DNA of 64,000 bases, taken from IMG/VR virus record IMGVR_UViG_3300010885_076238, positions 62,001-126,000 of that record, one strand, 5' to 3'. Positions 6,303 through 63,608 of this stretch are shown piece after piece (position 1 is the stretch's first letter; every line of letters starts with the position of its first letter). Below the pieces are notes generated by a model. That model was given only the letters and a program-made list of their open reading frames with translations. It had not been told where the DNA came from and did no database searches. Position numbers and translations under genes: made by a program.

Positions 6303-6938
6303 ATGGTTCGTTTGCCAAAGTACAAAAAAGATGCCGAAGCAGCATACAAATATGCGAAAAAAAATAATATAATTTTTTCTTCAGAGGAAGAAAACGTACT
6401 AACACAAAACCCAGAAGTAGCAATCAAATATGCTTTGAATCTTAAGAAAGAAAGACTATCTGATTTTGTTAACAAAAAGGTTTTTGAATATTATTCTTCA
6501 TTGATCAAGAAAACTCAAAAAAATAAACACTCTTCCGTCTTGCATAATTTTTTTGACTATTTGAAAATGATCAAGGACGTTCCTGATTTTTGTAAAAATG
6601 AAATTTTAGAAAATATTGACCCTGAGCTTTTATATATTTTTGCACAAATTTTAGACAACAAATTAACTGAAAAATACGAAAAAAGAATGTTTCAAAAATG
6701 CCAACAACATAATAATCTTTGGCCTTTGGTAGAATATCAATTTTACTTGAAAACAAAACTACCAGACTATATGCACAATTTTATGATAGCTAAAAATTTA
6801 GAATCGAATTGTAATTCTTCAAAAAATGCCATAGAGGCATATTTTCTAAACCTAAAAGATATTAAAAATATCTTGTTAAAAATTTCTTTGGTATTTGGAA
6901 AAGAAACCAAACTTAAAGAAATTATAGAAGAGCTATGA
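6303..6938 (+). CDS. LP-HN-M family protein (degenerate helical repeats)
   Basis: PKYKKDAEAAYKYA N-motif, KLPDYMHNFMIA, terminal TKLKEIIEEL; promoter motif at 6257-6281. Confidence 0.75.
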   Translation: MVRLPKYKKDAEAAYKYAKKNNIIFSSEEENVLTQNPEVAIKYALNLKKERLSDFVNKKVFEYYSSLIKKTQKNKHSSVLHNFFDYLKMIKDVPDFCKNEILENIDPELLYIFAQILDNKLTEKYEKRMFQKCQQHNNLWPLVEYQFYLKTKLPDYMHNFMIAKNLESNCNSSKNAIEAYFLNLKDIKNILLKISLVFGKETKLKEIIEEL

Positions 6939-7166
6939 GTATCAGTAAGAACACTCTTTTTGGTCTCGTTCTGTCTTTTCAATGAGTTCGTTGATAAACT
7001 CAAAATCGTAAACTCTTATTTTGTATTCTTCCATGATTTTGGCAATTTTTTCACTGAGTTCGTTGTTTTGCATCTTGCATTCTCCTAGGTCTTGCCTTCA
7101 TTGAAGATATCCTAGCTGATTTTAGATTGACTGTAAAGACCTGCTTTAAAAATATTAAAAAATTAA

Positions 7167-7191
7167 AATAATAATTGGCTGATTCCGTTAT
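7167..7191 (+). promoter_or_regulatory. phage promoter motif AATAAT-N13-CGTTAT
   Basis: Exact consensus, upstream of the 7266-10502 operon. Confidence 0.7.
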
Positions 7192-7265
7192 CTCTTTGTC
7201 CGCTTGCTTTACAAGTCTAATTTCTGGTCTATATTTATTCCAGCTTCACTAACAAAGGAGAAATC

Positions 7266-7454
7266 ATGAAAGTTTTTACTCTTGAAAATGTTGTTGATCG
7301 ACTCGTCAACGCAAAATCCCCGGCCCACAAAGCCCATGCTACTCGCGCACTCAAAACCTATGCTGTAATGAGAGCATTAGAGATTGGATCCACTCCATCC
7401 AGAGTAATCGCTGGGGTTCGTGCGGTTGTTACAAAGCGCAAGCAAATTGCCTAA
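7266..7454 (+). CDS. small basic hypothetical protein
   Basis: AAGGAG RBS; Lys/Arg/Ala-rich 62 aa. Confidence 0.7.
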   Translation: MKVFTLENVVDRLVNAKSPAHKAHATRALKTYAVMRALEIGSTPSRVIAGVRAVVTKRKQIA

Positions 7455-7477
7455 AAAATTAGAAAAGAAAAGCAGGG

Positions 7478-8230
7478 ATGCTTATGAAAACAATGTCGGT
7501 ATCTAGACAACCAAAATATTGTGAGTCTCCACATAAGTTTATGGCTAGAGATATAATCCCAAGCCTTTATAGACTTTTTAGTGGAAATGAATCAATTCCT
7601 GAAGGAAAACAATATTTGACTTTAGCCTCCATACAGGACAAAAGTCCTCGTAGCGAAGTTAATCAAATGGTTAATTCCGGCGTGTGTACCCGCAAACAAT
7701 TTGTAGGAATTGATAACAACAAAAAATACATCAAAAGAAATAAAAAAGCCCATCCAGAAGCAACTTTTATTTGTGAAGATTGGAATGTTTTGTTGGCAAC
7801 TAGACAATTCGATCCTGCGATTGTTTATTTGGACTCTACTCATTTCGGTGACAAATTACCAGCACTTAGAACCTTAAAGAATACGTTAGACATTTGCAAA
7901 AATGAAACATTAGTTGTTTGCAATGTTATGGAATCAAACCCCCGATCAGGATTAGGTGAGTTCCTAGATTCTAAAGTCTTACTGGAAAGCCTTCTTTATA
8001 GAGAGATTCCAGCAAAATATAAAGACTGGAACAGGAGCAGAGATTGCAAATCTTGGAGTCAGGAAGAAAACTCAAATATTTATATACCAAGCTACACATA
8101 TCAGACGGCCAAGACCTTAATGAAAAGTTATATTTTTTATAAAGGTTTTATGCCTACAGAAGAAGAAATCGAAAGTTTATTTTCTGAATTTAAAATTTGG
8201 TGTAATGATATTGAGAAAACATTTTGCTAA
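7478..8230 (+). CDS. SAM-dependent methyltransferase-like (Rossmann-fold) protein
   Basis: QFVGID (motif II-like), FICEDW (III-like), IVYLDST (IV-like); motif I is degenerate. Confidence 0.45.
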   Translation: MLMKTMSVSRQPKYCESPHKFMARDIIPSLYRLFSGNESIPEGKQYLTLASIQDKSPRSEVNQMVNSGVCTRKQFVGIDNNKKYIKRNKKAHPEATFICEDWNVLLATRQFDPAIVYLDSTHFGDKLPALRTLKNTLDICKNETLVVCNVMESNPRSGLGEFLDSKVLLESLLYREIPAKYKDWNRSRDCKSWSQEENSNIYIPSYTYQTAKTLMKSYIFYKGFMPTEEEIESLFSEFKIWCNDIEKTFC

Positions 8231-8249
8231 AAGAAAGAAGAAAGACATC

Positions 8250-13838: not shown

Positions 13839-14438
13839 ATGAACATAAAGAACGAACAGTTTTTGAAGCTAATCGATCAATACCCAGATGTTGCTTTTAG
13901 CTATTGTTCAGTAGCAAACAGATTCGCAGATAAAATTAATAAAAAAATATTTGATTCTGCTGAGTCGGTTTTGTTGCGTGATCCAAAGTATTGCTATAGG
14001 TACGCAGACGAAGTTATAAGAGGAAGATGGAAAAAAGCAGAAAACACTTTGTCTAAAGATATCGATTTTGCTTATAATTATGCTAAAAATATCTTAAAAA
14101 AAAGATTTTTATTGGCTGAAAATTTAATTTCTCAAGACCCTGAATATTCTTTATATTATGCTGAATTTGTTGTTAAAAAAAGATGGATGAAGGGCGAACA
14201 AGCAATATCAAGTAACCCAGCTTTCGCATATAAATATGCAGAATTTATAAAAAAAAGATTCTACAAAGGAGAAGAAGCAATAGGAGATAGTCCTGAATAT
14301 TCGTTTTATTATGCACAAAATATTATTCACGGAAAGTTGCCAGTAAAAATGCACTCAAAAATGATTGCGTATGCTTTGGATAATCCAAAAAATGAATTTA
14401 TTAATAAGTATTTTCAATTAATAAAATCTTCTGCTTGA
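13839..14438 (+). CDS. 26-aa helical-repeat protein, LP-HN-M family
   Basis: YAxxVIxGRWxxAE units; GKLPVKMHSKMIAYA. Confidence 0.8.
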   Translation: MNIKNEQFLKLIDQYPDVAFSYCSVANRFADKINKKIFDSAESVLLRDPKYCYRYADEVIRGRWKKAENTLSKDIDFAYNYAKNILKKRFLLAENLISQDPEYSLYYAEFVVKKRWMKGEQAISSNPAFAYKYAEFIKKRFYKGEEAIGDSPEYSFYYAQNIIHGKLPVKMHSKMIAYALDNPKNEFINKYFQLIKSSA

Positions 14439-17098: not shown

Positions 17099-17524
17099 AT
17101 GGAAATCGAACCACCAGACCCCTCTATCATGCTCAATAGTTTTCTTTGCATTCAAAAAGAAATTTTCGTAAATATTTGTGCTCATTTTAGCAAAAATGTT
17201 TGCACCAGTAATCAGGGAGTTTACAAGAGAGCTTTAGACTTCAGCACCGACTTCAATAATTGTGAGCCGTTTGATTTTCAAAGCTTGATGATCAGTGACG
17301 AAAATTTCCCTTTGTTTTGCAATTTTATGTTCGATTTCATAAACTACATTAGGAAGATTGACCAAAACCTCTATAATGAGAGTCTTGGATTCGCCAGAGA
17401 ACAAATGAAATTTCCCTCCATGCCTACTCTGGACATGGCTATTGTAGGTTGTGGAAATTCCATTACTATGTTCTTGGACATGAGAGAAAATGGGCTTTTG
17501 CCAAAAAAAGAGGATTTTGAATGA
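17099..17524 (+). CDS. hypothetical protein
   Basis: AAAGGA RBS; variant promoter AATAAT-N13-CGTTGT at 17038-17062. Confidence 0.7.
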   Translation: MEIEPPDPSIMLNSFLCIQKEIFVNICAHFSKNVCTSNQGVYKRALDFSTDFNNCEPFDFQSLMISDENFPLFCNFMFDFINYIRKIDQNLYNESLGFAREQMKFPSMPTLDMAIVGCGNSITMFLDMRENGLLPKKEDFE

Positions 17525-18084
17525 TGGAAAATAGAGTTGAGAAATACAAATTAAACGCAAAAAAAGCCTTTGAGTTTGCCGGGGGTTTTAGAGAAGTAAT
17601 TCCCGGTAGAGACAGAACCAGAAGAATTTATGGGAAAAAAGCTGGAAGGCCAGAATATACCAAGAAGATAGAGCTTAATTCAGAGGAGCAACTTGTTTTA
17701 TTGTTGGACTTAGAATACGCCTATCGTTATTCTGTAAAATTAATGGGCAAGAGACTTGCCGAAGAGGTTGAGGAAAAGTTTTTATCTCAAGCTGAAACTG
17801 TATTGGATGTTAAATACGCCATAGAATATTGCAATCGTTTTGAAATTGCTCTTCCTTCTTGTTTGCACAACAGAATATTAATGCACTCAGCTGTGCCAGT
17901 TGATAAAAAAGGAATGGCTTGGAGAGAAAGATATCAAATTGAAAGATCAGAAAGAAGGCAAAAAAAATATTTAGTTAAATTTCAAGAACAAAGAAAATCT
18001 TTCAAGATTATTTTAGAGGGAATAATTAAAGAAAATAATCTACATGAAAGCAATACTATAAAAGATTTACTTGATTCGATTTAG
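17521..18084 (+). CDS. LP-HN-M family protein
   Basis: KYKLNAKKAFEFA, ALPSCLHNRIL, terminal TIKDLLDSI. Confidence 0.75.
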   Translation: MMENRVEKYKLNAKKAFEFAGGFREVIPGRDRTRRIYGKKAGRPEYTKKIELNSEEQLVLLLDLEYAYRYSVKLMGKRLAEEVEEKFLSQAETVLDVKYAIEYCNRFEIALPSCLHNRILMHSAVPVDKKGMAWRERYQIERSERRQKKYLVKFQEQRKSFKIILEGIIKENNLHESNTIKDLLDSI

Positions 18085-19425: not shown

Positions 19426-20466
19426 ATGAAGCTATTTATTGAAACTCTTGAAGCACGAACCGTTTTGTCTGTAGTGTTTTTTGATAAAGAAACCAAAGCA
19501 GCGGTGGCAAATGCTTATAAAGACAAAATTATTTCAAGAGATGAGCTTGTTTCTATTTTTAGGCAGACCACCGATCAGAACACAATCACCGCCAATGAAC
19601 TATCAGATTTGAGAAAAGTTACGACGTTGAGAATGCCAGAGCATGTTCGATACTTGGCTAAAGATGTCGTTTTTGCGAATATTGCAAATGCAAAGTTTCA
19701 AGGCAATACTTTGGGCAACTTGACGGCAAATTCTCCCGCTCAAAAGATTAATAATCTTATAGATAAATGGTTTTATGGAAAAGACCGTCCAGCCTTGCCT
19801 AACAATCTATCATATAAAGAAAGCAAATTGCCTTTATTCGACAATGGAGCGACAAGCACGGATGTTATTCAAGGTCAACTTGGAGATTGTTATTTATTGG
19901 CATCATTAGCCTCTGTTGCAGATAAATTAGGCATAAGAACTTCGTTTATCGACAATGGCGACAGAACATGGACGATTAGGCTTTATGATTTGAATGGCAT
20001 ACGCAAGGTGGATTATATCACCGTTGACAGTTACCTTCCGGTTGATGCGAATGGGTCATCCATTTATGCAAATTTTGATAAAGAATTATGGGTTGCACTA
20101 ATCGAAAAAGCATATGCACAATATAATGAAACGGGTGGCACATGGCATTTAGAAAAGTCAAATAGTTATCAAGCAATAGTGGGTGGCTATCCTGTTCTTG
20201 CACTAGAAAGCATAACGGGAGTGCCTACTAAATGTAATTTTTTCTCTGATGCTATGGCTCAAACAACATTGAACAAATCACTTTATCGCGGCGATGCTGT
20301 TGTTTTATCTGCCCCAGTTAAAGATAAAGATGTTTCTCATTCTTATTATGTAAAATCCTATTTAAATGGCTTGTATTATTTGTATAATCCTTGGGGCTTT
20401 AGTCATTTAGAAGTTACTTGGGATCAATTGAAAACAAACATAAACTTTGTTATAGAGGCAAAATGA
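19426..20466 (+). CDS. calpain-like (peptidase C2) cysteine protease with planctomycete-type LExRxVLS N-terminal motif
   Basis: QGQLGDCYLLA (Cys), LWVALIEKAYA, SHSY (His), YNPWG (Asn); N-terminus MKLFIETLEARTVLS. Confidence 0.88.
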   Translation: MKLFIETLEARTVLSVVFFDKETKAAVANAYKDKIISRDELVSIFRQTTDQNTITANELSDLRKVTTLRMPEHVRYLAKDVVFANIANAKFQGNTLGNLTANSPAQKINNLIDKWFYGKDRPALPNNLSYKESKLPLFDNGATSTDVIQGQLGDCYLLASLASVADKLGIRTSFIDNGDRTWTIRLYDLNGIRKVDYITVDSYLPVDANGSSIYANFDKELWVALIEKAYAQYNETGGTWHLEKSNSYQAIVGGYPVLALESITGVPTKCNFFSDAMAQTTLNKSLYRGDAVVLSAPVKDKDVSHSYYVKSYLNGLYYLYNPWGFSHLEVTWDQLKTNINFVIEAK

Positions 20467-20822
20467 CTCCTTTTTTAGCTTATCAAAAAATCGTTCTTGC
20501 AATGAACAACCTTCATGACAAAAGCGATAAATTCGCCAAAAGAATAAATAAAAAATCGAAAAAGTATAAATATTTTCGCATTCCAGAGTACGAAAAGTTT
20601 TTAATAAATGACGTTAAATTTTCTTATTATTATGCTAGGGATGTGGTGCATGGAAAATTGCCAGAGGACATGCACAATTTAATGCTTTGTGAAGCATTAG
20701 CTAATTCAAATAACGCTTATGTTAAAAACTATTTTGAAATTTGTAAAGGAAATTTTCCAATCACGAATCAAAATCTTGGCTTGAACTCATTGAAAATGGA
20801 AAGACAACTTTATGGAACATAA
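20463..20822 (+). CDS. short LP-HN-M family protein
   Basis: YYARDVVHGKLPEDMHNLML. Confidence 0.75.
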   Translation: MTPFLAYQKIVLAMNNLHDKSDKFAKRINKKSKKYKYFRIPEYEKFLINDVKFSYYYARDVVHGKLPEDMHNLMLCEALANSNNAYVKNYFEICKGNFPITNQNLGLNSLKMERQLYGT

Positions 20823-48120: not shown

Positions 48121-49137
48121 ATGAATAGCTACCACAAGCAATATAGAGAATTTGTCAAAGAACTCAACCCAACCGATGCAGAAGTTAATAATTTTTTGTG
48201 GGGACATAAAGCAGATTTCTCTCAACATAAGAAATTAGGAATAATTAAAAAAATTCTCACCAGTCCAAAATGGTGTTACGAATACGCAAAACTTATAAAT
48301 AAAGATAGATGGGAAAAGGGCGAAAAAACCATACTGACTGATGCCCAACATTCACACCTTTACGCAAGAGATATAATCAAAGGTAGATGGATCGAAGCAG
48401 AAGAAATTATCAAAACAGAATCCTCAATTGCGTATGATTATGCAGCAAACATAATCAAAGGCAGATGGATCGAAGCAGAAGAAATTATCAAAGAGGATTC
48501 ATATAGAACATATTTTTACGCAGCAAACATAATCAAAGGCAGATGGATCGAAGGCGAAGAAATTATCAAAACAGCCGGTGACGCTGACGCTGCTTATCAT
48601 TATGCAAAAGATATAATTAAAGGTAGATGGATAGAAGCAGAAGATTTTATTAAAACAAATCCAGGTTGTGCTTTTGGTTACGCAAATGATGTTATCAAAG
48701 GTAGATGGATCGAAGCAGAAGATTTTATTAAAACAAATCCATGCTATGCTTATGAGTATGCAAAAGATGTGATCAAAGGCAGATGGATCGAAGCAGAAGA
48801 TTTTATTAAAACAGATCCATACTATGCTTATTATTACGCAAGAGATGTCATCAAAGGTAGATGGATCGAAGGCGAAGAAATTATTAAAACAGATCCACGC
48901 CATGCTTATGATTATGCAAAAGATGTGATCGAAGGCAGATGGATCGAAGGTGAAGATATTATTAAAACAGATCTGCGTTATTCATGGGATTATGTTCGAA
49001 ATTTAGTAAAAGAAAGATGGGAAAATGGAGAAGGAATCTTCGCATCTGATCCACAATATTTGTATAGATATGCCACGGAAATTCTAATAGACGAACTACC
49101 CCCCGAATTAGAAGCAGCATACGCTTTACATGAATAA
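48121..49137 (+). CDS. 26-aa helical-repeat protein with near-identical units
   Basis: [I/V]I[K/E]GRWIE[A/G]E x8 plus degenerate flanks; promoter at 48073-48097. Confidence 0.9.
   Translation: MNSYHKQYREFVKELNPTDAEVNNFLWGHKADFSQHKKLGIIKKILTSPKWCYEYAKLINKDRWEKGEKTILTDAQHSHLYARDIIKGRWIEAEEIIKTESSIAYDYAANIIKGRWIEAEEIIKEDSYRTYFYAANIIKGRWIEGEEIIKTAGDADAAYHYAKDIIKGRWIEAEDFIKTNPGCAFGYANDVIKGRWIEAEDFIKTNPCYAYEYAKDVIKGRWIEAEDFIKTDPYYAYYYARDVIKGRWIEGEEIIKTDPRHAYDYAKDVIEGRWIEGEDIIKTDLRYSWDYVRNLVKERWENGEGIFASDPQYLYRYATEILIDELPPELEAAYALHE
48373..49002 (+). repeat. 78-bp coding tandem repeat, 8 copies (one of 84 bp)
   Basis: Near-constant core ATCAAAGGYAGATGGATCGAAG...ATYAAAAC with variable codons between copies. 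Confidence 0.9.
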
Positions 49138-51737: not shown

Positions 51738-52691
51738 ATGAACGCTAAAGAATCATACTTTCACGCAAAAAATGTTCTCAAAGGAAGAAGCAAAGACTTT
51801 GAAGATCATATATTAAAAACCAAATGGAATTGTTGGTCAGAAGATCATAAGTATTACAACCTTTATTTTAAAAATATACTCAAAGGCAGATGGGAAGAAT
51901 TAGAAAATCGCCTTGTAAAAGACATTGTGGCTCCAAAAAAAGGAGATATGCTTTCGCACAACGAGTGGAACATAGCAATAAATTATTGTGAAAATATTAA
52001 TGAAAGATGCAATGAATTAGAAGAAAAAATATTATCTCTTGTTAAAAATTGGCGCTTTGATGATATGGCAATAAACTATTGTGAAAAAGTCATCAAAGGA
52101 AGATGGGAAGAATTAGAAGAAATTATTAAAAAAGAGCCAAATTCCCTTTCTCGCGCACACACTTGCTACTTGTACGCAGAAAGAATCATAAAAGGCAGAT
52201 GGAAGGAAGCAGAAGAACTTATTAAAGAAGAACCAAGAGTCGCTGTTGATTATGCTAGAGAAATAATCAAAGGCAGATGGAATGAAGCAGAGCCATACAT
52301 TCTAAAAAATGAATTATGGGCATTCAATTATGCAAGAGACATAATCAAAGATAGATGGATCGAAGCAGAAAATATTATTACAGGCTCCGCACAAAAATAT
52401 TACAAACAACTTGTTAAAAATAAAATTCTCGACCTGTTACAAAAAAAAGATTATGACAATGTTTTGAAATACGTTGATTATAAGCACTTCACTAATATCA
52501 TTAAAAATGCAGAGAAAAAGCACCACATTCCAGATGCTATCCGAAATGCGATGATGGCATCCTGCATCACAGGAAACGACCAAAACAGCACCAGCTTTTT
52601 CAAACAAGAAAAAATCTTCAAGGAAAAAATGAAAAATTTCTTGAAAGATTATAAAGGATTACTTGTTGATGATGTAATCGACAAGCTATAA
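51738..52691 (+). CDS. helical-repeat protein, LP-HN-M family
   Basis: IKGRWxE[L/A]E units; IPDAIRNAMMA; terminal VDDVIDKL. Confidence 0.85.
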   Translation: MNAKESYFHAKNVLKGRSKDFEDHILKTKWNCWSEDHKYYNLYFKNILKGRWEELENRLVKDIVAPKKGDMLSHNEWNIAINYCENINERCNELEEKILSLVKNWRFDDMAINYCEKVIKGRWEELEEIIKKEPNSLSRAHTCYLYAERIIKGRWKEAEELIKEEPRVAVDYAREIIKGRWNEAEPYILKNELWAFNYARDIIKDRWIEAENIITGSAQKYYKQLVKNKILDLLQKKDYDNVLKYVDYKHFTNIIKNAEKKHHIPDAIRNAMMASCITGNDQNSTSFFKQEKIFKEKMKNFLKDYKGLLVDDVIDKL

Positions 52692-52733: not shown

Positions 52734-53552
52734 ATGACCCCACAAGAAGCATATTCTGAATTAATTAATCTTTTCAATAGCTCCCGACGAGGAATCGTCT
52801 TTTACTTTAAAGATTTTATTAATGCACCCGAACACAAAAAAGAAGTAGATGAACTAAAAAAAATAATTATTCAAGACCCCTTCACCGCTTCAGATTTTGC
52901 AATAAGTTCCGGCGAAAGATGGATCGAAGCAGAAGAAATTATTAAAACAAATCCAAAAATATTAAGCCATTATTTTTGTATGTTGTTTACAAGGGAATTC
53001 AAAAGAAGATGGAATGAAGCAGAAGCAGATATTCTAAAAGGAACTCCTAATAGTGTTTGGGATTATTATAAACCTGTGCAGTATCATGTGTCAAACTCTT
53101 TCCCAGACAATGTTTGGATAGAAGCAGAACCAGTTTTTGAAAAGAAAATGAGCATCTTTCATCAATATGTTCTAACCACAAAAAAGCCCAACAAAACCTA
53201 TGAACAAAAAATATTAAATGATCCAAGTTCTAAATATAATCCCAAATACATCTATGACTACTCTTCCAAAGTTCTACAAAGCAGATGGAAAGAAGCAGAA
53301 CATATAATATTAAAAAATCCAGACTACGCAGCAAAATATTGCTCGAAATTTAAGATGGTAGTTCCAGAAGAAATTCATAACCAAATAGTTGCAGAAGTCG
53401 CCTTAACCGACAAATCTTCCTCTTTCAGAAAGAAATTTCTCCAAGATCAAACCAAAAGAAAAGAAAAATTTTTAGAATATCTCAAAGAACTTGTTAGTAG
53501 TAATGTTATTAACAAAGATAGCACAGTTGAAGAATTAATAAATAATATTTAA
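52734..53552 (+). CDS. helical-repeat protein, LP-HN-M family
   Basis: RWIEAE units; VPEEIHNQIVA; terminal TVEELINNI. Confidence 0.85.
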   Translation: MTPQEAYSELINLFNSSRRGIVFYFKDFINAPEHKKEVDELKKIIIQDPFTASDFAISSGERWIEAEEIIKTNPKILSHYFCMLFTREFKRRWNEAEADILKGTPNSVWDYYKPVQYHVSNSFPDNVWIEAEPVFEKKMSIFHQYVLTTKKPNKTYEQKILNDPSSKYNPKYIYDYSSKVLQSRWKEAEHIILKNPDYAAKYCSKFKMVVPEEIHNQIVAEVALTDKSSSFRKKFLQDQTKRKEKFLEYLKELVSSNVINKDSTVEELINNI

Positions 53553-53571: not shown

Positions 53572-54441
53572 ATGACAACTCTAAAAATCCCCAAGTTCAG
53601 AAATGCCAAAAGAGCAGCAGAGTTTGCTGTTAAACACAAAGTTACACTAAACGAAGAAACAGAAAAATTAATAGCACAAGACGCTGTAGCGTCCTACAAC
53701 TACGCATATCACGTTAAAGGCAAATTTGAACTTGCTGAACCCTTAATCGCTAAAGATTTGCATTTAGCAGTAATCTACGCCATCTATATTCTAAAAGGTA
53801 GATTCTATCTGGCCGAAAAAATGATTGCAGAATCTATCACAGAATATGGCTTGAAAAAAGAAAATTTCTATAACGCACCAGCATTTAATTACGCAAGAAG
53901 TGTTTGCCAAGGAAGATTTGAACTATTAGAACCATTAATTATTAATGATCCTGATCTTTGCTATCATTACGCCGCAGATGTTATTGGAGGAAGATGGGAG
54001 GAAGGAGAACCAACAATAGCAAAAGATTTACAACTTTCTCTGAATTATGCAAGATATGTATTAGACGGAAGATTTGAACTAGCAGAACCCTTGCTTGCAC
54101 AAGACTCAGACTACGCTTTTGAATACGCATCAGATGTTATTAACAGATATATAACTAACTGCGACTACAGAGACAGAACAAATAAACTTGCAAAAAGATT
54201 TGAACTTGGTGAAGAAGCTATTTCTAAAAATATTAAGAAATTAGCAAAATATATCGATCTAACCAAACAAGAACTAACAGGCACTATTCACAACATGATG
54301 ATCGCAAGAAGCCTAACCGATGACCTTCTTTCAAAAACATACTTCGATTACATCAGCGATAATAAAAAAACACTACTAGAGTATTTGAGCAAATATCCCG
54401 AAAATATGACCGTAAAAGAAATAACCCAATCTCTTAGTTAA
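53572..54441 (+). CDS. helical-repeat protein, LP-HN-M family
   Basis: PKFRNAKRA N-motif; GRFELAE units; LTGTIHNMMIA; leaderless promoter at 53541-53565. Confidence 0.85.
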   Translation: MTTLKIPKFRNAKRAAEFAVKHKVTLNEETEKLIAQDAVASYNYAYHVKGKFELAEPLIAKDLHLAVIYAIYILKGRFYLAEKMIAESITEYGLKKENFYNAPAFNYARSVCQGRFELLEPLIINDPDLCYHYAADVIGGRWEEGEPTIAKDLQLSLNYARYVLDGRFELAEPLLAQDSDYAFEYASDVINRYITNCDYRDRTNKLAKRFELGEEAISKNIKKLAKYIDLTKQELTGTIHNMMIARSLTDDLLSKTYFDYISDNKKTLLEYLSKYPENMTVKEITQSLS

Positions 54442-54469: not shown

Positions 54470-55174
54470 ATGGAAGAACTAAACGAAATTATCATCTGCT
54501 CAATCCTCAACAAACTGAAAATTGATGCTATCGCCACTGTTTCAGAACAACTCAGTTGGGCAGATGCAGATGAAGATGGAAAAGTAGACGGCGGTGTGCA
54601 TTATTTTTTGGAACTTGACGCACTAAAAGAAACAAGAGAAAGATTAGTAAAAGAAATTCTTGAAGGATTCAATCGTCCAGAAATTCGAAATTATAGATTC
54701 AACAATAGCATCAAATACTCAAAAGTGCATCAGTTACAAGAAAACGAAAAACACATAAAGGAAATAAAATTTTTCGGAATCAACAGCAAAAATAAAACAA
54801 TAGAACCAATAAGTGAAAAATTAGATAAAAATATTAAAGATCTACTGCCAGAAAAAGTATACAATTTTATTATTGCAAAATGTTTGGTAGATGAAAATCA
54901 TAAACATATACTCAGTCTAAATGGATTAGATTTAATTCTCAATTATTGGAAAAATAATCTCCCCGATACAGATAATGATTGTTGGTCGGGTGACGGAAAT
55001 TCACAATATTTTTGGGAAGTGTTGTTCAAAGAAAACAACCAAATAAACGTAGATTATGGAGGCGAATTTGGAGCAGGCGAACTAAATTTCTATAGCCACA
55101 GTCAAGATTTATTAAAATATGATTTTTGGAAGGTTTTTACCGAAAATTATCCAAAAATTACTAATAATTCATAA
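54470..55174 (+). CDS. hypothetical protein (paralogue of 57301-57921)
   Basis: MEELNEIII vs MQEFNEIII; LPEKVYNFIIA; promoter at 54440-54464. Confidence 0.75.
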   Translation: MEELNEIIICSILNKLKIDAIATVSEQLSWADADEDGKVDGGVHYFLELDALKETRERLVKEILEGFNRPEIRNYRFNNSIKYSKVHQLQENEKHIKEIKFFGINSKNKTIEPISEKLDKNIKDLLPEKVYNFIIAKCLVDENHKHILSLNGLDLILNYWKNNLPDTDNDCWSGDGNSQYFWEVLFKENNQINVDYGGEFGAGELNFYSHSQDLLKYDFWKVFTENYPKITNNS

Positions 55175-56606: not shown

Positions 56607-57272
56607 AGATACGAAAAAGTAGAACCAAGAGAAATTAAATACTACTACAGCAACTATATTGAGAACGAAAATGTAACAAACTTCTTCGCACAAAAATACG
56701 CGGGAGATAAAACCACCACAGAAGAACTAAACCTACTACAAATTCTTATCTCAAATGTTACAAAAAATATACTTGAAAAAACAAAATCAACCCAAGATTG
56801 TATAGTATTTGACCCTACCACAGAAGATTTTTTTGTAACCGATCTAGATTCTTTCCAAAATCAACGCAGTTTTTTCTACCGAAGCGACTTTACTGATTTT
56901 TCAACTAAATGGAACGAAAATTGTTTACCAAGTTTACATAATGCAAAATTAATAAAAAATCGAAAAGTAGATACGCTGCTTTTTGATAATGTTCGACAAC
57001 ACCTAGATGAAAAAGTATTTAATGCTCTATTGGCTACCGCCGCTTTTTGCCAAGATGAACTCAAAAATTACACAAATGTTTCTTGCGGCTTCTTATTCAA
57101 ATTCTTATCCACTCAGCACTACAACGCACATAAAGAAAAATATTATGAGCAAATAAGTCAAGAATATTACATTTGCAAACAGTACGAAGGACAAGTTGTT
57201 ATAGCAAACAAAAAAACAGTAAATTTAATGCCTATCGAATGGAATGATGTAAATATTGATTATAACCCTTAA
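56604..57272 (+). CDS. hypothetical protein
   Basis: Leaderless; degenerate LDEKVFNALLA motif. Confidence 0.7.
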   Translation: MRYEKVEPREIKYYYSNYIENENVTNFFAQKYAGDKTTTEELNLLQILISNVTKNILEKTKSTQDCIVFDPTTEDFFVTDLDSFQNQRSFFYRSDFTDFSTKWNENCLPSLHNAKLIKNRKVDTLLFDNVRQHLDEKVFNALLATAAFCQDELKNYTNVSCGFLFKFLSTQHYNAHKEKYYEQISQEYYICKQYEGQVVIANKKTVNLMPIEWNDVNIDYNP

Positions 57273-57300
57273 TATTAATAATTCCAAACCGTTATACAGT

Positions 57301-57921
57301 ATGCAAGAATTCAACGAAATTATTATTAAGTCAATATTTAAGAAATTAAATATTGATTGCCTCATTCTAAGCCAAAAAGATTTCGTCGCTCACGATAAAG
57401 AAGATTGCTGGGTAAATCACAAACTAAGAAAGAAAATCTTCGCCCTAAAAAATGACAAAGTGTCCCTCGTAGAACTCAGCCTAAAAGACTCATTGCCCGA
57501 AAAAGTCTACAACTATATCTTGGCAGAATCCTTGGCTAAAGATTCTAAAGAATTATTAAAAAGCCCAAGAGAAATCCTTATGGATATGTGGAAAAACTTT
57601 CGTCCAGACCTAGATGATGAATTATTTGATGATGATTGCGGCAACGACGAAAGAAACGAAAGAAACGGAGCAATGGAATTTATAAGTTATTGGATCTTCT
57701 TGTATCTAGAAAATAATGAAGTAAAAATTAAATACTCTGTGCGTGACGTTAAACGCTCAGGATGGAACAACGAAGAAGTAAAAATTCCAGATATAATATC
57801 AATAAGAACATCAGAAGATGACCTCAAATACCAAGAAAAAACCAACCTTATAATCTCAGAAGATGACCTCAAAAACCCTATGTGGGAAAAAATCTGCTGC
57901 AAAGATAATTGGATAAAATAA
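57301..57921 (+). CDS. hypothetical protein (paralogue of 54470-55174)
   Basis: Leaderless ATG 57301; LPEKVYNYILA. Confidence 0.75.
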   Translation: MQEFNEIIIKSIFKKLNIDCLILSQKDFVAHDKEDCWVNHKLRKKIFALKNDKVSLVELSLKDSLPEKVYNYILAESLAKDSKELLKSPREILMDMWKNFRPDLDDELFDDDCGNDERNERNGAMEFISYWIFLYLENNEVKIKYSVRDVKRSGWNNEEVKIPDIISIRTSEDDLKYQEKTNLIISEDDLKNPMWEKICCKDNWIK

Positions 57922-60594: not shown

Positions 60595-61341
60595 ATGGCT
60601 AAGATAAACTTATTGGACTTTTCTAAGACGTTCTCGTTGAATAGTCATGGATACAGGGGAGATTACTGGTCTAATTCTACTATAGGCGCTCCTGCTGGCG
60701 GGGGTGCTTGGACATTATCTTCTGATTTTGAAGTTGCTGTTATCAATAAGATAGTTAGTTGGAGTGATTGGAAGGGTTGTCCTGAGAATATTTTGTTATT
60801 GGCCTTTTTTAAGAAGGCTGGGAAGTTATCGGACAACAGTATTTTCTACAGCAATATTAATTCAATAAAGAGACATAGTCATTGGCGTGGATGTGACGTA
60901 GTTTATACATTTTGTAGGAATGTATTGAAGGGTAGGTTGCCGAGTGGAGCGGAGGGGAATTTTCTTTCGGACATATGGGATAATCATTATGGTAGTAGGT
61001 TTGCATATAAGTATGCTAAGTATGTGATTCGTGGTCGGTTGCCTGTGGAGTATGAGAAGGGTTGTCAGAGTCTTGATTACTTGGGATTTTTGGAGACTAA
61101 GGGGATAGAGATTAGTGATATATTAATTAATAGTACGGCTTTATCCTTTAGTTACTACAAGTATTTTTATCATTTGCCTGAGGTTGTTCATAATTTTATG
61201 TTGGCGATGCAGTTGAGTGGAGATGGTTATGCTTCTGCTTATTTCCGTCAGCGTAATAAGGATGATGTTTTGATAAAGAACAGGTTGAAGATGGTTGATC
61301 CTAATAAGACTGTGAAGGAAGTATTGATGGGGTTGAAATGA
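60595..61341 (+). CDS. LP-HN-M family protein
   Basis: KGRLP/RGRLP units; HLPEVVHNFMLA; terminal KTVKEVL; GGAGG; promoter AATAAT-N13-CGATAT at 60552-60576. Confidence 0.75.
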   Translation: MAKINLLDFSKTFSLNSHGYRGDYWSNSTIGAPAGGGAWTLSSDFEVAVINKIVSWSDWKGCPENILLLAFFKKAGKLSDNSIFYSNINSIKRHSHWRGCDVVYTFCRNVLKGRLPSGAEGNFLSDIWDNHYGSRFAYKYAKYVIRGRLPVEYEKGCQSLDYLGFLETKGIEISDILINSTALSFSYYKYFYHLPEVVHNFMLAMQLSGDGYASAYFRQRNKDDVLIKNRLKMVDPNKTVKEVLMGLK

Positions 61342-61829: not shown

Positions 61830-61949
61830 TAAATTAAAAAAAATTAAGTGTGGTTTTTTGCGGGGAAAAGTGAGCTTTACAAGAAAAAAAATTGGGCTAA
61901 AATGTTTGTTGTGTTTACGGTAAAATTTTTTTCACATGGAGGCTAAATT

Positions 61950-62423
61950 ATGCCCGCTGGAAGACCAAAGGGATCGAGTGGAACTAACAAGAGTTCGATT
62001 ATTCGGGAATACATTAAAGCTAATCCCACAGCGACTACGAATGAAGTGATGGAGGCGTTGGGTCAGAAGGGCATTGAGGTTAGTCAAGCTCTTGTGGCTG
62101 GAGTACGTTCTAGGGAGATGCGTGGCCCTGGGAATAAGAGTCGCAAGCGTGGTGAGATCACGGTTAGCGAATTGAATAGTATTAATGCGATGGTGGAGAA
62201 GTTTGATGATCGTTCTGTAATTATGAATATTATAGACGACATGACGACCTTGATTAAGGAAATTGGTGGTATTGATCGTTTTGAAGAAGCGATGAAGGAG
62301 TTCCAGAATTGGAAGCCTGAGTCTGAATCTTTGAAGGCGGAAGCTGCTTCTGACATATCTGGTGATGACGATGATGAGGATTCGGATGATGATGAGGACG
62401 AGGATGAAGACGAGGACGAATGA
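61950..62423 (+). CDS. AT-hook + winged-helix nucleoid-type protein with acidic tail
   Basis: GRPKGS; NKSSIIREYIKANPTATTNEVMEAL...GIEVS; poly-D/E tail; TTTACA-N16-TAAAAT at 61876-61903; GGAGG. Confidence 0.7.
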   Translation: MPAGRPKGSSGTNKSSIIREYIKANPTATTNEVMEALGQKGIEVSQALVAGVRSREMRGPGNKSRKRGEITVSELNSINAMVEKFDDRSVIMNIIDDMTTLIKEIGGIDRFEEAMKEFQNWKPESESLKAEAASDISGDDDDEDSDDDEDEDEDEDE

Positions 62424-62425
62424 AT

Positions 62426-62623
62426 TGGGAAGTTTTCGCTGACTTCCCATAGTTAAGCCTTCGGGTTAGGATCGCGGGTAATCCTTTAATTAACTGCCGT
62501 AGAGTTTTTAGAAGTTTCTGTAAGACTGAAATCTTCTATTGTTGGTTGCACAAATTTTAATAAAGAATATACTAGGGCCATTTCTGTGATATACTTTACA
62601 GAAGTGGCCTTAGTATTTCTTTA
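62426..62623 (+). ncRNA. candidate structured RNA (several hairpins)
   Basis: 8-bp stem 62426-62449; cUUCGg-containing junction 62451-62495; 28-bp stem 62561-62623 with 3 G-U pairs. Confidence 0.4.
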
Positions 62624-62671
62624 AACCAAGTAGGCATCTCCTGATGTTTATTTACTCAAGGAAGGGTAGGT

Positions 62672-62857
62672 ATGTTTAGGAATGAGAAGATAGTTGTTTT
62701 GGATATAGTTGATAGGTGTCTTAAGTTGGAGGATGATCGTGGTCAGATAATAAGTTTGATTTTTATTAAGGGTGGAAAATTAATAATTAAGGGTGAGTTG
62801 AAAGTTTCAGATAGTTCGATAGAGGCTCCAGAGATTAATTACTTGGATAAAAAATAA
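62672..62857 (+). CDS. hypothetical protein
   Basis: Short ORF with purine-rich leader. Confidence 0.55.
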   Translation: MFRNEKIVVLDIVDRCLKLEDDRGQIISLIFIKGGKLIIKGELKVSDSSIEAPEINYLDKK

Positions 62858-62894
62858 AAATAATTATGTATCGTTATGGGGTAGGAGACAAAAA

Positions 62895-63608
62895 ATGGAA
62901 AATACCCCTAAGAAGCCTACTGAAATTCTTCCTTATAGGGAAGAGGATTGGGCAGGCGTTAGCGTTCCTAAGTTTAGGGATGCGAGTCGTGCGTGGAAGT
63001 TTTTGAAGAAGCATGGTTTTTATCGGCTTCCTGAGAAAACTGAATTAGTATTTTTGAAGGATTTATCATTAGCGATAGATTATGCTGTTCGGGTAGGCAC
63101 TAGGTTGCCGGTTGTTTTTGAAACTGAGTTGAAGAAGCATCCTCAGTTGAGTTATGATTATATTTCTAGGGTGATTCAGGCGCCTTTGGAGGAATTTGAA
63201 GAAACTATTAGCAAGGTTCCTTCGTTGCTTGTGAAGTATAGTCATGAAATTTTAGAGGCGCCTTTGCCGGAGCATTTGGAAAATTGTTTGGCGGGTGATC
63301 CGTATAATTGTTTTGAATATGCGTGGCAGGTTCTTGACGGACGTTTGCCGGAAACTTTGCACAACTATATGTTTTGTGCTAACATGGACAATAACTTTGG
63401 ACGTAGGTATCGTGGTGGGTATCATACTAAGTTGAAGGGAGCAGAGGAATACAGTCCTGACTATGTTAGTCCAGAGACTTATTTTGAATTTATCAAGTGG
63501 CAAAGGAAAAATTTGCACAGGCAGATTCAGCATTATCAAAAAATTTATGGTGTTGAATCGAAGCAGACTGTTGGCGAATTTTTACATGAATTAGAGCATG
63601 GTCGTTAA
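62895..63608 (+). CDS. LP-HN-M family protein
   Basis: VPKFRDASRAW N-motif; GRLPETLHNYM; terminal QTVGEFL; promoter at 62853-62877. Confidence 0.8.
   Translation: MENTPKKPTEILPYREEDWAGVSVPKFRDASRAWKFLKKHGFYRLPEKTELVFLKDLSLAIDYAVRVGTRLPVVFETELKKHPQLSYDYISRVIQAPLEEFEETISKVPSLLVKYSHEILEAPLPEHLENCLAGDPYNCFEYAWQVLDGRLPETLHNYMFCANMDNNFGRRYRGGYHTKLKGAEEYSPDYVSPETYFEFIKWQRKNLHRQIQHYQKIYGVESKQTVGEFLHELEHGR

What the first reader, a model, noticed from the sequence alone, without database searches (positions are those of the whole stretch)
6303..63608. Large expansion of a 26-aa helical-repeat family sharing an LPxx(L/M/I)HNx(M/I) cap
Seen: about 15 ORFs (6303, 13839, 17521, 20463, 23317, 25546, 26504, 41422, 42870, 48121, 51738, 52734, 53572, 60595, 62895) are built from, or retain traces of, a unit A[Y/F]xYAxx[V/I][I/L]KGR[W/F]xE[A/G]ExxIxx[D/N]P. 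Most end in a cap such as KGKLPEILHNKM. Subsets add an N-motif (PK[F/Y][R/K]xA) and a terminal T[V/I]xE[L/I]xxx[L/I] helix. Copy number per protein ranges from about 1 to 10, and most genes have their own promoter. Inference: a diversified alpha-solenoid binder library, analogous to ankyrin/LRR expansions in giant viruses, used against many host targets such as defence proteins. I know no named family for this repeat.
Basis: partly seen in the sequence, partly recalled or inferred. Interest (0 to 1): 0.85.

Follow-up and report, generated by a model that had tools for sequence, protein, structure and literature searches.

The report
Unnamed 26-residue helical-repeat phage family
A 204-kb uncultured freshwater phage spends a fifth of this window on 17 related genes for helical-repeat proteins built from a 26-residue unit that no database names; the same unit occurs in thousands of proteins that look virus-borne, so it is a large overlooked family of probable binding proteins of unknown target.

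Summary
It covers 12,975 nt, 20% of the window. The unit is A[YF]xYAxxVIKGRWxEAExxIxxDPxx with period 26. AlphaFold2 gives confident all-alpha solenoids (pLDDT 95.7 and 90.1): a 12-residue helix A, a KGRW loop and a 7-residue helix B.

No Pfam-A, NCBIfam, PDB sequence, PDB fold or BFVD fold match reaches significance, and GenBank phages hold nothing similar. A profile nevertheless finds 6,575 protein clusters in metagenomes and 72 viral-contig loci. One of those loci carries 25 tandem paralogues.

The LPxxΦHNxΦ cap marks a subfamily kept, paralogue by paralogue, in related large phages. The variable positions (25, 26, 3, 6, 7) lie on one face of helix A. There pN/pS is 3.1 in the young array of another virus and about 1.2 inside window gene 48121.

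Best reading: a new kind of alpha-solenoid binding scaffold, with paralogues that have diverged in role. The solenoid, the diversification and the lack of a name are supported. The proposed targets (host defence) are untested.

The parts
6303..6938 (+). Family member, 211 aa, long-tail type: N-motif (LPKYKK), degenerate repeats, cap LPDYMHNFM (6759-6785), tail helix KLKEIIEEL
   Evidence: Cap HMM E 2e-8. In the BLAST cluster. No repeat-HMM domain at E<0.01. Tail motif.
13839..14438 (+). Family member, 199 aa, short-tail type: 5 repeats (13992-14333), cap LPVKMHSKM (14337-14363), KYF helix
   Evidence: Repeat HMM E 9e-39. Cap HMM E 1e-14.
17521..18084 (+). Family member, 187 aa, long-tail type: degenerate repeats, cap LPSCLHNRI (17851-17877), tail helix TIKDLLDSI
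   Evidence: Cap HMM E 4e-5. BLAST edge to 52734, E 4e-8. Orthologue in L094 at 53% identity.
20463..20822 (+). Family member, 119 aa: one repeat plus cap LPEDMHNLM (20658-20684) plus KYF helix. Its start overlaps the stop of the calpain-like protease gene 19390-20466.
   Evidence: Cap HMM E 7e-18. Repeat HMM E 6e-4.
23317..24438 (+). Family member, 373 aa, long-tail type: 5-8 repeats (23419-24012), cap LPDFIHNRM (24262-24288), tail helix LREILSSV
   Evidence: Repeat HMM E 2e-43. Cap HMM E 2e-22. Homologue P0063 and L099 2737-3837 share the architecture.
24431..24907 (+).
   Evidence: Cap HMM E 1e-12. BLAST edges to 13821, 20418 and 23317. No Pfam hit. Orthologue L099 3943-4410.
25546..26511 (+). 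Family member, 321 aa, short-tail type: 9 repeats (25678-26373), cap LPEILHNKM (26377-26403), KYLKAKKY helix
   Evidence: Repeat HMM E 8e-62. Cap HMM E 2e-18. Orthologues in L094 and L095 at 46-53% identity, with a whole-repeat indel.
26504..27037 (+). Doubtful or peripheral member, 177 aa: no repeat and no cap; shares only the C-terminal region and tail helix SIKTLLENL
   Evidence: Single BLAST edge to 52734, E 1e-6, over the last 70 aa. Tail motif.
28373..29497 (+).
   Evidence: Repeat HMM E 1e-17. Cap HMM E 6e-11. phrog_4400, unknown function. 63 homologues: those of 340-412 aa carry repeats plus cap (26 of 28 checked), and those of 214-259 aa (one of 300) are the N-domain alone. No PDB sequence match.
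41422..42345 (+). Family member, 307 aa, short-tail type: 9 repeats (41512-42198), cap LPEAIHNKV (42244-42270); the protein modelled
   Evidence: Repeat HMM E 1e-88. AF2 pLDDT 95.7, pTM 0.86, 23 helices. Orthologues P0001 and L094 at 48-51% identity.
42870..43415 (+). Family member, 181 aa: 5 repeats (43041-43361); cap LPEKMHNIM (43365-43391) sits almost at the C-terminus
   Evidence: Repeat HMM E 6e-42. Orthologues in L094 and L095 at 51-54% identity, lacking one repeat.
48121..49137 (+). Family member, 338 aa: 10 repeats (48274-49050), no LPxxxHN cap (degenerate ELPPELE). Contains a 78-bp tandem DNA array at 48360-48973.
   Evidence: Repeat HMM E 7e-112. TRF: period 78, 7.8 copies, 78% matches.
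51738..52691 (+). Family member, 317 aa, long-tail type: 7 repeats (51753-52379), variant cap IPDAIRNAM (52527-52553), tail helix VDDVIDKL
   Evidence: Repeat HMM E 4e-54. Orthologue in L094 at 38% identity with the same IPDTLRN variant.
52734..53552 (+). Family member, 272 aa, long-tail type: 2-4 repeats, cap VPEEIHNQI (53361-53387), tail helix TVEELINNI
   Evidence: Repeat HMM E 5e-15. Cap HMM E 3e-4. Orthologue L099 14715-15563.
53572..54441 (+). Family member, 289 aa, long-tail type: N-motif IPKFRNAKRA, 6 repeats (53692-54231), variant cap LTGTIHNMM (54271-54297), tail helix TVKEITQSL; the second protein modelled
   Evidence: Repeat HMM E 9e-54. Orthologues P0122-P0124 at 39-42% identity with the same tail.
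60595..61341 (+). Family member, 248 aa, long-tail type: 1-2 recognisable repeats, cap LPEVVHNFM (61174-61200), tail helix TVKEVLMGL
   Evidence: Cap HMM E 1e-9. Repeat HMM E 2e-5. BLAST edges to 41422, 25546 and 51738.
62895..63608 (+). Family member, 237 aa, long-tail type: N-motif VPKFRDASRA, degenerate repeats (RLP in place of RW), cap LPETLHNYM (63345-63371), tail helix TVGEFLHEL
   Evidence: Cap HMM E 2e-7. BLAST edges to nine members.
54470..55174 (+). Possible outlier: 234-aa protein with an internal cap-like LPEKVYNFI (54845-54871); paralogue of 57256-57921
   Evidence: Cap HMM E 0.21, not significant. Paired with 57256 by BLAST. No Pfam hit.
57256..57921 (+). Possible outlier: 221-aa protein with an internal cap-like LPEKVYNYI (57493-57519)
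   Evidence: Cap HMM E 0.011. Paired with 54470 by BLAST.

Best explanation
What is shown. The 17 genes encode soluble all-alpha solenoid proteins made from a previously unnamed 26-residue helix-loop-helix repeat.
- Helix A is 12 residues (positions 24-26 and 1-9: PxxA[YF]xYAxxVI). The loop is KGRW. Helix B is 7 residues (xEAExxI), and xxD links to the next unit.
- The conserved residues are A1, Y4, A5, V8, I9, R12, W/F13, E17 and I20. The hypervariable residues are 25, 26, 3, 6 and 7.
- The window's subfamily ends in a special terminal unit (VIxGK-LPxxΦHNxΦ followed by a ...KYF helix). Nine members add a K/E-rich helix and a terminal T[VI]xEΦΦxxΦ helix.
- Two members keep the cap but replace the repeat array. 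28373-29497 carries a 230-aa N-domain ahead of two repeats. 24431-24907 carries a different unknown domain and no repeats.
- The genes lie among DNA/RNA ligase, helicase and methylase genes. About half follow a promoter-like motif shared with those genes.

What is inferred.
- The conserved residues form the core and the ladder between repeats. The hypervariable residues fall within a 120-degree arc on the solvent side of helix A, so stacked repeats display one continuous variable ribbon.
- The proteins act inside the infected cell as stoichiometric binding modules (adaptors, inhibitors or targeting domains). The variable ribbon sets the partner, and each paralogue has its own partner.
- The cap and tail are first of all a structural terminator. 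They may also be a common docking element.
- The partners (host or phage, defence or not) are unknown.
For: Fold: AF2 models with pLDDT 95.7 and 90.1 are regular helical hairpins throughout.

Repeat anatomy and per-position conservation.

Helix-face geometry: positions 25, 26, 3, 6, 7 are i, i+1, i+4, i+7, i+8. At 100 degrees per residue this spans -20 to +100 degrees. The conserved A1, Y2, Y4, A5, V8 and I9 span 140-300 degrees (own calculation from the DSSP assignment).

Diversification at exactly those positions:
- In the 83 units of the 25-gene array in L024, pN/pooled pS is 3.14 (bootstrap 2.64-3.71), against 0.12 for core positions.
- In the 8 young units of window gene 48121 it is 1.19 (0.99-1.45), against 0.07 for the core.
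- Between orthologues, positions 3, 7, 19 and 26 keep only 7-16% identity, while Y4, R12, E17 and I20 keep 82-100%.

Modularity:
- Elsewhere the repeat array is fused to AAA_5, ClpA/B-type AAA, AAA+lid_6 and ankyrin domains, and to 55 BLAST clusters of non-repeat flanking segments; one 243-aa unknown domain accounts for 117 of 194 segments.
- In the window it is fused to the 28373 N-domain, which also exists alone in other contigs.

Retention: seven of the paralogues were matched to their own orthologue in related contigs L094, L095 and L099, with whole-repeat indels.

Location and signals: the N-termini as read look hydrophilic, with no obvious signal peptide or membrane segment (no predictor was run). 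The setting is non-structural, with shared promoter-like motifs.
Against: - No partner, ligand or phenotype is known for any member, and no homologue has been characterised.
- Model coordinates could not be read. Which side of the solenoid (concave or convex) carries the variable ribbon was not seen, and the roles of R12, E17 and Y4 are inferred.
- The clear pN/pS>1 signal comes from another virus's array. Inside the window it is borderline, and at the orthologue level the variable positions are simply saturated, which also fits weak constraint.
- Many conserved residues are charged (K10, R12, E15, E17, D23). That could mean a conserved functional surface rather than a purely structural ladder.
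- The pairwise pN/pS treats repeat units as independent and ignores gene conversion.
Confidence: 0.6

Rival explanations
1. Hub-and-adaptor system. The conserved LPxxΦHNxΦ-KYF cap (with or without the tail helix) is a docking module. It plugs 17-19 different heads (repeat arrays or enzymes) into one common machine, for example an AAA+ unfoldase or protease of phage or host. The family would then work like F-box or poxvirus ANK-PRANC substrate receptors.
For: - The cap is kept even where the repeat array is gone (24431) or reduced to two units behind another domain (28373).
- Cap-like motifs sit inside two further proteins (54470, 57256).
- 26 of 28 checked fusion orthologues of 28373 keep the cap.
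- Elsewhere the same repeats are fused covalently to AAA+ ATPases.
- An AAA gene lies about 2 kb upstream of the window and a DUF2201/VWA gene just downstream.
- The tail motif occurs only at the C-termini of family members.
Against: - A solenoid needs a terminal cap for purely structural reasons.
- The cap is only slightly better conserved between orthologues than the rest of the protein (0.43-0.62 against 0.37-0.66).
- 48121 has no cap and most of the wider family lacks it (2 of 134 top hits).
- No hub was identified.
- The AAA fusions are a small minority among 274 inspected proteins.
Confidence: 0.15
2. Modular nucleic-acid readers in the manner of PPR, PUF or TAL-type repeats: one repeat per base, with the hypervariable positions as the code.
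For: The tandem helical hairpins have two to five hypervariable positions each. A basic K10-G-R12 loop is conserved in every unit. The genes sit among DNA/RNA-metabolism genes.
Against: - pI ranges from 5.2 to 9.4, and half the members are net acidic.
- Each unit also carries conserved E15, E17 and D23.
- The hypervariable positions use a wide alphabet rich in W, Y, L, E and R rather than a small polar code.
- The period is 26, not 34-36.
- No sequence or fold match to PPR, PUF, mTERF or TAL structures.
Confidence: 0.08
3. Structural or assembly role: scaffold, internal, decoration or compartment-forming proteins of a large phage. The repeats would serve self-assembly, and variability would reflect weak constraint.
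For: Solenoids can polymerise. Copy number and repeat number vary freely. Variable positions are saturated between orthologues.
Against: - The genes lie in a non-structural region next to ligases, a helicase and a methylase, and share its promoter-like motif.
- No PHROG structural category matched, apart from a spurious partial terminase hit.
- pN/pS of about 3 on one helix face in L024 is not expected from mere relaxation.
- Seventeen distinct retained paralogues are hard to explain by a scaffold role.
Confidence: 0.07
4. Anti-defence or host-takeover arsenal: each paralogue neutralises a different host defence or host factor. This is a special case of the best explanation, with the targets specified.
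For: The same evidence as for the binding-module reading. In addition, there is diversifying selection in a young array, the family is almost confined to viral contigs, and the genes lie in an accessory, early-like region.
Against: No direct evidence for any target. Orthologue-by-orthologue retention at 38-72% identity across related phages suggests conserved partners rather than fast arms races in this lineage. Comparison with defence-system models (PADLOC) was not run.
Confidence: 0.2

Closest known systems
DUF4116 (PF13475) short helical repeats of giant viruses, amoeba-associated bacteria and protists
   Same: Both are short-period tandem helical hairpins, and both are expanded in large viruses. 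From memory, DUF4116 has a period of about 24-25 residues and a Y-A motif at the start of helix A. DUF4116 proteins are the named repeat family with the highest query TM-scores among the viral structure matches (TMq 0.37-0.40). One orthologue (P0131) gives a 13-bit DUF4116 hit in its repeat region.
   Different: No window protein matches the Pfam model even at E<=1. The 13.2-bit hit is far below the 24.9-bit cut-off. The fold E-values are 0.8-1.3. The KGRW loop, the E17/R12 signature and the LPxxΦHN cap were not found in any Pfam model; that they are foreign to DUF4116 itself is from memory. The relationship, if any, is remote and was not tested by profile-profile comparison.
Classical alpha-solenoid repeats: TPR (34 aa), Sel1, HEAT/ARM, PBS-lyase HEAT-like repeats, and the 24-aa leucine-rich repeat variant
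   Same: Stacked antiparallel helix pairs form a superhelix. Conserved small and hydrophobic core positions alternate with variable surface positions. These repeats commonly serve as protein-binding scaffolds and as fusion partners of enzymes.
   Different: The period is 26, with an unusually short helix B of 7 residues. There is no significant sequence match: the best is TPR_7 at 20 bits against a 27.9-bit cut-off. There is no significant fold match either (best PDB E 0.03, TM <= 0.29).
Poxvirus ankyrin-PRANC proteins and cellular F-box proteins (analogy of architecture only)
   Same: Many paralogues in one large viral genome combine a variable repeat array with a short conserved C-terminal module.
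   Different: There is no sequence or fold relation. The host is prokaryotic, with no ubiquitin system. Whether the cap binds anything is unknown.
PF13693 (HTH_35) and PF05798 (Phage_FRD3), the Pfam labels that precomputed annotation attaches to some family members
   Same: Repeat-rich homologues collect summed scores above the cut-off for these models.
   Different: The matches cover only 17-31 of the 75 profile positions, and no single stretch is significant. No window protein matches. T4 Frd.3 itself resembles one unit only over about 14 residues. These labels are by-products of repetition, not homology of domains.

Membership tests
TPR / Sel1-type repeats | 34-residue (Sel1: 36-44) helix-turn-helix unit matching the Pfam TPR/Sel1 models | tested here: not met
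   The period is 26. The only hit is TPR_7 at 20.1 bits against a 27.9-bit cut-off, in one protein. NCBIfam gives only a 16-bit TPR_BatC hit against a cut-off of 175.
TPR / HEAT / ARM solenoids | Significant structural superposition on a solved member | tested here: not met
   Foldseek of two confident models against 350,542 PDB chains gave no match with E<=0.001. The best were E 0.03 and 0.4, with TM <= 0.29.
DUF4116 (PF13475) | Match to the Pfam model above its gathering score | tested here: not met
   No hit at E<=1 in ten window proteins. Orthologue P0131 scores 13.2 bits against a 24.9-bit cut-off.
DUF4116 (PF13475) | Remote homology by profile-profile or fold comparison | tested here: inconclusive
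   BFVD DUF4116 proteins give TMq 0.37-0.40, with E 0.83-1.3. No DUF4116 alignment was at hand for hhalign.
HTH_35 (PF13693) / Phage_FRD3 (PF05798) | Alignment over the whole 75-residue domain, with a significant single stretch | tested here: not met
   Only profile positions 10-54 are touched, in pieces of 17-31 residues, with '0 stretches' significant. There is no hit in the window proteins. T4 Frd.3 was read directly.
Ankyrin / LRR expansions | 33-residue ANK unit, or a 20-30-residue LRR unit with a beta strand | tested here: not met
   The models are all helix, with no strand. No Ank or LRR Pfam hits were found in the window proteins. An Ank domain occurs only as a separate fusion partner in L077.
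PPR / PUF / TAL-type nucleic-acid code repeats | 34-36-residue unit, a small alphabet at one or two code positions, and a basic binding surface | tested here: not met
   The period is 26. There are five hypervariable positions with a broad, aromatic-rich alphabet. pI is 5.2-9.4. No sequence or fold match was found. Binding itself is not testable here.
F-box / PRANC-like adaptor architecture (works-like claim only) | Variable recognition part plus a conserved short C-terminal module in many paralogues | tested here: met
   Fifteen window ORFs match the cap HMM, 14 of them through the cap region itself, behind arrays of 0-9 repeats or behind other domains.
F-box / PRANC-like adaptor architecture (works-like claim only) | The conserved module binds one common hub protein | not testable with these tools
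   No complex prediction or interaction data were available. There is only circumstantial AAA+ linkage.
Known phage protein families (PHROGs) | Full-length match to an annotated PHROG | tested here: not met
   The best hit is phrog_28193 (unknown function), E 8e-12, over 47 of 681 profile positions. The other hits are short pieces of unknown-function PHROGs. tblastn of 41422 and 48121 against 50,697 GenBank phage records gave no match.

The most novel reading that the evidence does not exclude
The 26-residue unit would be a new natural hypervariable binding scaffold used across thousands of proteins that look virus-borne, with a single helix face under diversifying selection. In this phage lineage the LPxxΦHNxΦ-KYF cap (with or without the tail helix) would be a docking module that connects 17-19 different recognition or enzymatic heads to one hub, such as an AAA+ unfoldase or protease. 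That would be a bacteriophage counterpart of F-box or ANK-PRANC substrate-receptor families.
Probability: 0.15. Interest if true: 0.85.

Novelty: new variant of a known kind. Interest (0 to 1): 0.6.

Why it matters
- Scale. A profile of this unit finds 6,575 protein clusters (at 50% identity) in public metagenomes. Proteins reach 2,253 residues, and one viral contig carries 25 tandem genes. Yet the unit has no Pfam or NCBIfam model, no solved structure, no cultured-phage representative and no literature trace found here. Naming and modelling it would annotate a sizeable piece of viral dark matter.
- Testability. Its variable residues are confined to one helix face and show pN/pS of about 3 in a young array. 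That gives a concrete hypothesis: it is a binding scaffold engaged in conflict or in partner diversification.
- Practical use. A very regular 26-residue hairpin that AlphaFold predicts at pLDDT above 95 is also a candidate scaffold for designed binders.
- This phage. A fifth of a 64-kb accessory region is devoted to the family, and the paralogues are retained in related contigs. The family is therefore probably central to how this lineage handles its still unknown host.

Tried and rejected
1. Named-family searches. Pfam-A on 25 window proteins and about 26 outside homologues, NCBIfam, PHROGs, PDB sequence search (single protein and two profiles) and Foldseek against PDB and BFVD gave only sub-threshold or partial hits: RepB, TPR_7, Phage_gp38, HTH_35, Phage_FRD3 and CW_7-like lysozyme repeats at E 0.3. 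All were rejected as single-hairpin or compositional resemblances.
2. T4 Frd.3 was fetched and read. It resembles one unit over only about 14 residues.
3. tblastn against GenBank phages found nothing for 41422, 48121 or the 828-aa neighbour. The ligase is at most 32% identical to any cultured phage, so neither lineage nor host could be assigned.
4. The DNA-mimic (Ocr/ArdA-like) idea was rejected, because pI runs from 5.2 to 9.4.
5. The N-domain of 28373 and the 243-aa N-domain that dominates the wider family gave no PDB or Pfam identity. The nucleotidyltransferase reading of 28373 rests on a motif only.
6. The upstream motif is not a family-specific promoter, because non-family genes share it, and it is not conserved in relatives.
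7. Literature searches for the motif strings and for jumbo-phage repeat expansions found no description.
8. The search for related loci with broad alignments failed for lack of conserved stretches. A degenerate DNA pattern was used instead.
9. Not done: mapping variable positions on 3D coordinates (the models are not readable from the sandbox), a PADLOC scan, and HHsearch against DUF4116.

Full report
**Source.** The window is positions 62,001-126,000 of a 204,311-bp contig from a JGI metagenome (3300010885, Ga0133913_10000027), which is also IMGVR_UViG_3300010885_076238. It has 31-36% G+C, is densely coded on the + strand, and carries no tRNA gene. Its recognisable genes are phage-like and non-structural:
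- a T4-type RNA ligase 1;
- two ATP-dependent DNA ligases, one with a WGR domain;
- a helicase, an N6/N4 DNA methylase and a metallophosphoesterase;
- a HicA-like protein and a calpain-type cysteine protease.

The DNA ligase is at most 32% identical to that of any cultured phage.

- A repeat HMM seeded on ORF 48121 and iterated on all six-frame ORFs finds a 23-residue core with period 26 in 12 ORFs, with 1 to 10 copies each.
- A strict regular expression for the core hits 31 times, against none in 200 shuffles. The strict cap [LIV]PxxΦHNxΦ hits 12 times against 0.035 expected.
- A cap HMM built only from proteins outside the window recovers 15 window ORFs, including the repeat-poor 6303, 17521, 60595 and 62895.
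- ORF 26504 hangs on by its C-terminal tail alone, and 48121 has no cap.
- Two more proteins (54470, 57256) carry an internal cap-like LPEKVYN motif, but this is not significant.
- Together the 17 genes take 12,975 nt, 20% of the window. The 10-kb flanks on either side hold no further member.
- The tail motif T[VI]x[ED]ΦΦxxΦ occurs five times in the whole ORF set, each time at the very C-terminus of a family member. A relaxed form marks nine members and no other ORF.
- Gene 48121 contains a 78-bp tandem DNA array (7.8 copies, 78% matches), so it grew by recent internal duplication.

**Anatomy.** AlphaFold2 models of 41422 (pLDDT 95.7, pTM 0.86) and 53572 (pLDDT 90.1) are regular all-alpha solenoids. 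From the DSSP strings:
- helix A covers repeat positions 24-26 and 1-9 (PxxA[YF]xYAxxVI);
- the loop is K10-G11-R12-W13;
- helix B covers positions 14-20 (xEAExxI);
- positions 21-23 (xxD) lead into the next unit.

Y4, R12, E17 and I20 are 92-100% conserved among window units. A1, A5, V8, I9, W/F13 and A/G16 are strongly conserved. Positions 3, 6, 7, 14, 18, 19, 25 and 26 vary. The family-wide consensus from 42 double units of many contigs is AYxYA(R/K)DVIKGRWPEAExxIxxDPxx.

In the window's subfamily the last unit turns into VIxGK-LPxxΦHNxΦ(I/L)xxA, followed by a helix ending in KYF. The 'long-tail' members (6303, 17521, 23317, 51738, 52734, 53572, 60595, 62895, and 26504 as a remnant) add a long K/E-rich helix and the short terminal helix. 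The PK[FY][RK]xA N-motif, from its alignment with the repeat register, looks like the start of a degenerate first unit.

Two members are fusions. ORF 28373-29497 has a conserved 230-aa N-domain whose GNSLN...NDIDIFP motif resembles, by my reading, the G[SN]S...DxD signature of nucleotidyltransferases. This is an inference from the motif only. The domain is followed by two repeats and the cap. It also exists on its own in other contigs. ORF 24431-24907 has a different unknown domain joined directly to the cap.

**Is it a known family?** Nothing says so.
- Sequence models: Pfam-A, NCBIfam and the PDB sequence search gave no hit above threshold. PHROGs gave only a 47-residue piece of an unknown-function family.
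- Folds: Foldseek of both models found no PDB or BFVD match at E<=0.001. The best PDB hits are designed or generic solenoids with TM<=0.29.
- DUF4116: giant-virus DUF4116 proteins are the named repeat family with the highest query TM-scores (TMq 0.37-0.40, E about 1). One orthologue gives a 13-bit DUF4116 hit against a cut-off of 24.9. This is a lead to a possible remote relationship, not membership.
- Spurious labels: the HTH_35 and Phage_FRD3 labels in precomputed annotations come from summed partial matches to 17-31 residues. T4 Frd.3, read directly, resembles one unit over about 14 residues.
- Isolates and literature: GenBank phages contain nothing similar, and full-text searches for the motif strings found no paper.

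**How widespread is it?** Very.
- One protein search returned 247 metagenomic homologues, all unnamed.
- A profile of the double unit scored against 1.84 billion representatives found 6,575 proteins at E<=0.001 and 1,701 at E<=1e-30, up to 2,253 residues with 38 matched stretches.
- A back-translated pattern found 72 loci in IMG/VR, many on contigs of 100-480 kb.
- The same kind of pattern found only 17 stretches in one genome each of 185,579 prokaryotic species. All are in MAGs, scattered from Nitrososphaerota and Promethearchaeota to Polynucleobacter and Bacteroidota. That is the distribution expected of virus-borne genes binned with cells.
- Expansions recur. IMGVR_UViG_3300035181_001867 has 25 tandem paralogues in 15.7 kb, and several other loci have 3-6.
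- Of 274 inspected proteins, 95 are essentially repeats only. Another 143 have an N-terminal extra domain of at least 100 aa; 117 of these share one unknown 243-aa domain and the rest fall in many small clusters. A few carry AAA_5, ClpA/B-type AAA, AAA+lid_6 or ankyrin domains.
- The LPxxΦHN cap is rare in the wider family: 20 of 120 close hits and 2 of 134 top representatives. It marks a subfamily.

**Evolution in this lineage.** Related contigs carry one-to-one orthologues of seven window paralogues (17521, 23317, 25546, 28355, 41422, 42840, 51738) at 38-72% identity, in broadly the same order, with gains and losses of whole repeats. These contigs are L094 from SRR3184736 and L095 from SRR23126155. 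L099, from a 487-kb JGI contig, carries cap-bearing counterparts of 24431, 52734 and five of these. They share the WGR ligase and the calpain-like protease as neighbours. The expansion is therefore old and each copy is retained. This argues for separate roles rather than a rapidly turning-over library.

**Where is the variation?**
- Between orthologues, positions 3, 7, 19 and 26 keep 7-16% identity, while Y4, R12, E17 and I20 keep 82-100%.
- Among the 83 in-register units of the young 25-gene array, nonsynonymous diversity at positions 25, 26, 3, 6 and 7 is 3.14 times the pooled synonymous diversity (bootstrap over units 2.64-3.71). Core positions give 0.12 and the variable positions of helix B give 1.04.
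- Among the eight young units of window gene 48121 the same ratio is 1.19 (0.99-1.45), against 0.07 for the core.
- Positions 25, 26, 3, 6 and 7 are i, i+1, i+4, i+7 and i+8 of helix A, within an arc of about 120 degrees. The conserved A1, Y2, Y4, A5, V8 and I9 occupy the opposite arc (own calculation from the helix limits).
- The variable residues thus form one stripe per helix, and a ribbon along the stack.

**Mechanism.**
- Shown: the fold class, the repeat architecture, the cap and tail modules, the fusions, the retention of paralogues, and the location of variability.
- Inferred: the proteins are intracellular binding modules whose helix-A ribbon sets the partner, and the paralogues bind different partners. 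Where the repeats are fused to another domain, as in 28373 or the AAA+ fusions elsewhere, they would target that activity. The cap is at least a structural terminator.
- Open: whether the cap is also a shared docking site (the hub-and-adaptor rival). The cap's survival in 24431 and 28373 and the AAA+ fusions make this worth testing.
- Less likely: a nucleic-acid code reading, given the mixed pI (5.2-9.4), the broad aromatic-rich alphabet at variable sites and the lack of any match.
- Less likely: a structural virion role, given the genomic setting and the selection signal.

**Verdict.** The finding is real and larger than described. It is best filed as a new kind of alpha-solenoid repeat: a new variant of a known kind of system, repeat-protein expansions in large viruses. 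Its target is unknown. Interest 0.6.

Noticed in passing
window, about 21 + strand sites, e.g. 7167-7191, 11129-11153, 23272-23296, 25515-25539, 28330-28354, 41391-41415, 45391-45415, 53541-53565, 54440-54464, 57917-57941, 62853-62877: A promoter-like motif, AATAAT(A/T)AT-N(about 10)-CGTTAT, with fixed overall length of 25 nt, lies mostly 5-60 nt upstream of ORF starts, up to about 75 nt at one site. There are about 21 distinct + strand sites (34 overlapping pattern matches), against 3 matches on the - strand and 2.8 matches in shuffles. It precedes family and non-family genes alike. At 41422, 53572, 25546 and 54470 it ends 5-6 nt before the ATG, which suggests leaderless or near-leaderless mRNAs. 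It is almost absent from the related contigs L094, L095 and L099.
   Followed up: partly
window 11173-12729 and 12726-13796 (+): A second repeat family: two adjacent paralogues (518 and 356 aa) built from units of about 57 residues (…SFEELKKEV…EY+K…WPS.P…Y…W.GW.DFFG) that match Pfam INT_rpt (PF14882) near its threshold.
   Followed up: no
window 19390-20466 (+): A calpain-family (Peptidase_C2) cysteine protease domain, E 1e-17, in a phage. Its stop overlaps the start of family member 20463. The protease is conserved next to the WGR ligase in the related 487-kb contig (L099 403-1479).
   Followed up: partly
window 236-1204, 3317-4591, 45433-46521 (+): Three ligases lie in one 46-kb stretch: a T4 RnlA-type RNA ligase, an ATP-dependent DNA ligase, and a second ligase with an N-terminal WGR domain and a weak similarity to capping enzymes.
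   Followed up: no
window 30050-32536 and 34149-36446 (-), with 33694-34152 (+) / 36453-37133 (-): A minus-strand island holds two large paralogous proteins (828 and 765 aa) and a second small paralogue pair. None has a Pfam, PHROG or GenBank-phage match.
   Followed up: partly
L024 (IMGVR_UViG_3300035181_001867, contig positions 2982-18650): There are 25 head-to-tail paralogous genes of the same repeat family. They have near-identical N- and C-termini and 2-11 repeats each (mostly 4-8). Overall pN/pS is 1.3, and about 3 on one helix face. The array has 39-40% G+C, against about 34% in the 4 kb downstream of it (upstream flank not examined).
   Followed up: partly
outside the window: proteins P0002-P0036 and others: The commonest architecture of the wider family is an unknown 243-aa N-terminal domain (motifs DPTxNxxYxxW, GTKWCTA, GPLY, KYQxH) followed by 4-10 repeats. 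The domain has no Pfam or PDB match.
   Followed up: partly
contig positions about 59.2-60.3 kb and about 126.1-127.4 kb (L097 6970-8094; L098 11162-12481): An AAA ATPase gene lies just upstream of the window and a DUF2201 (VWA plus metallopeptidase-like) gene just downstream. The related contig L094 has an AAA_5/CbbQ plus VWA pair close to its family members.
   Followed up: no
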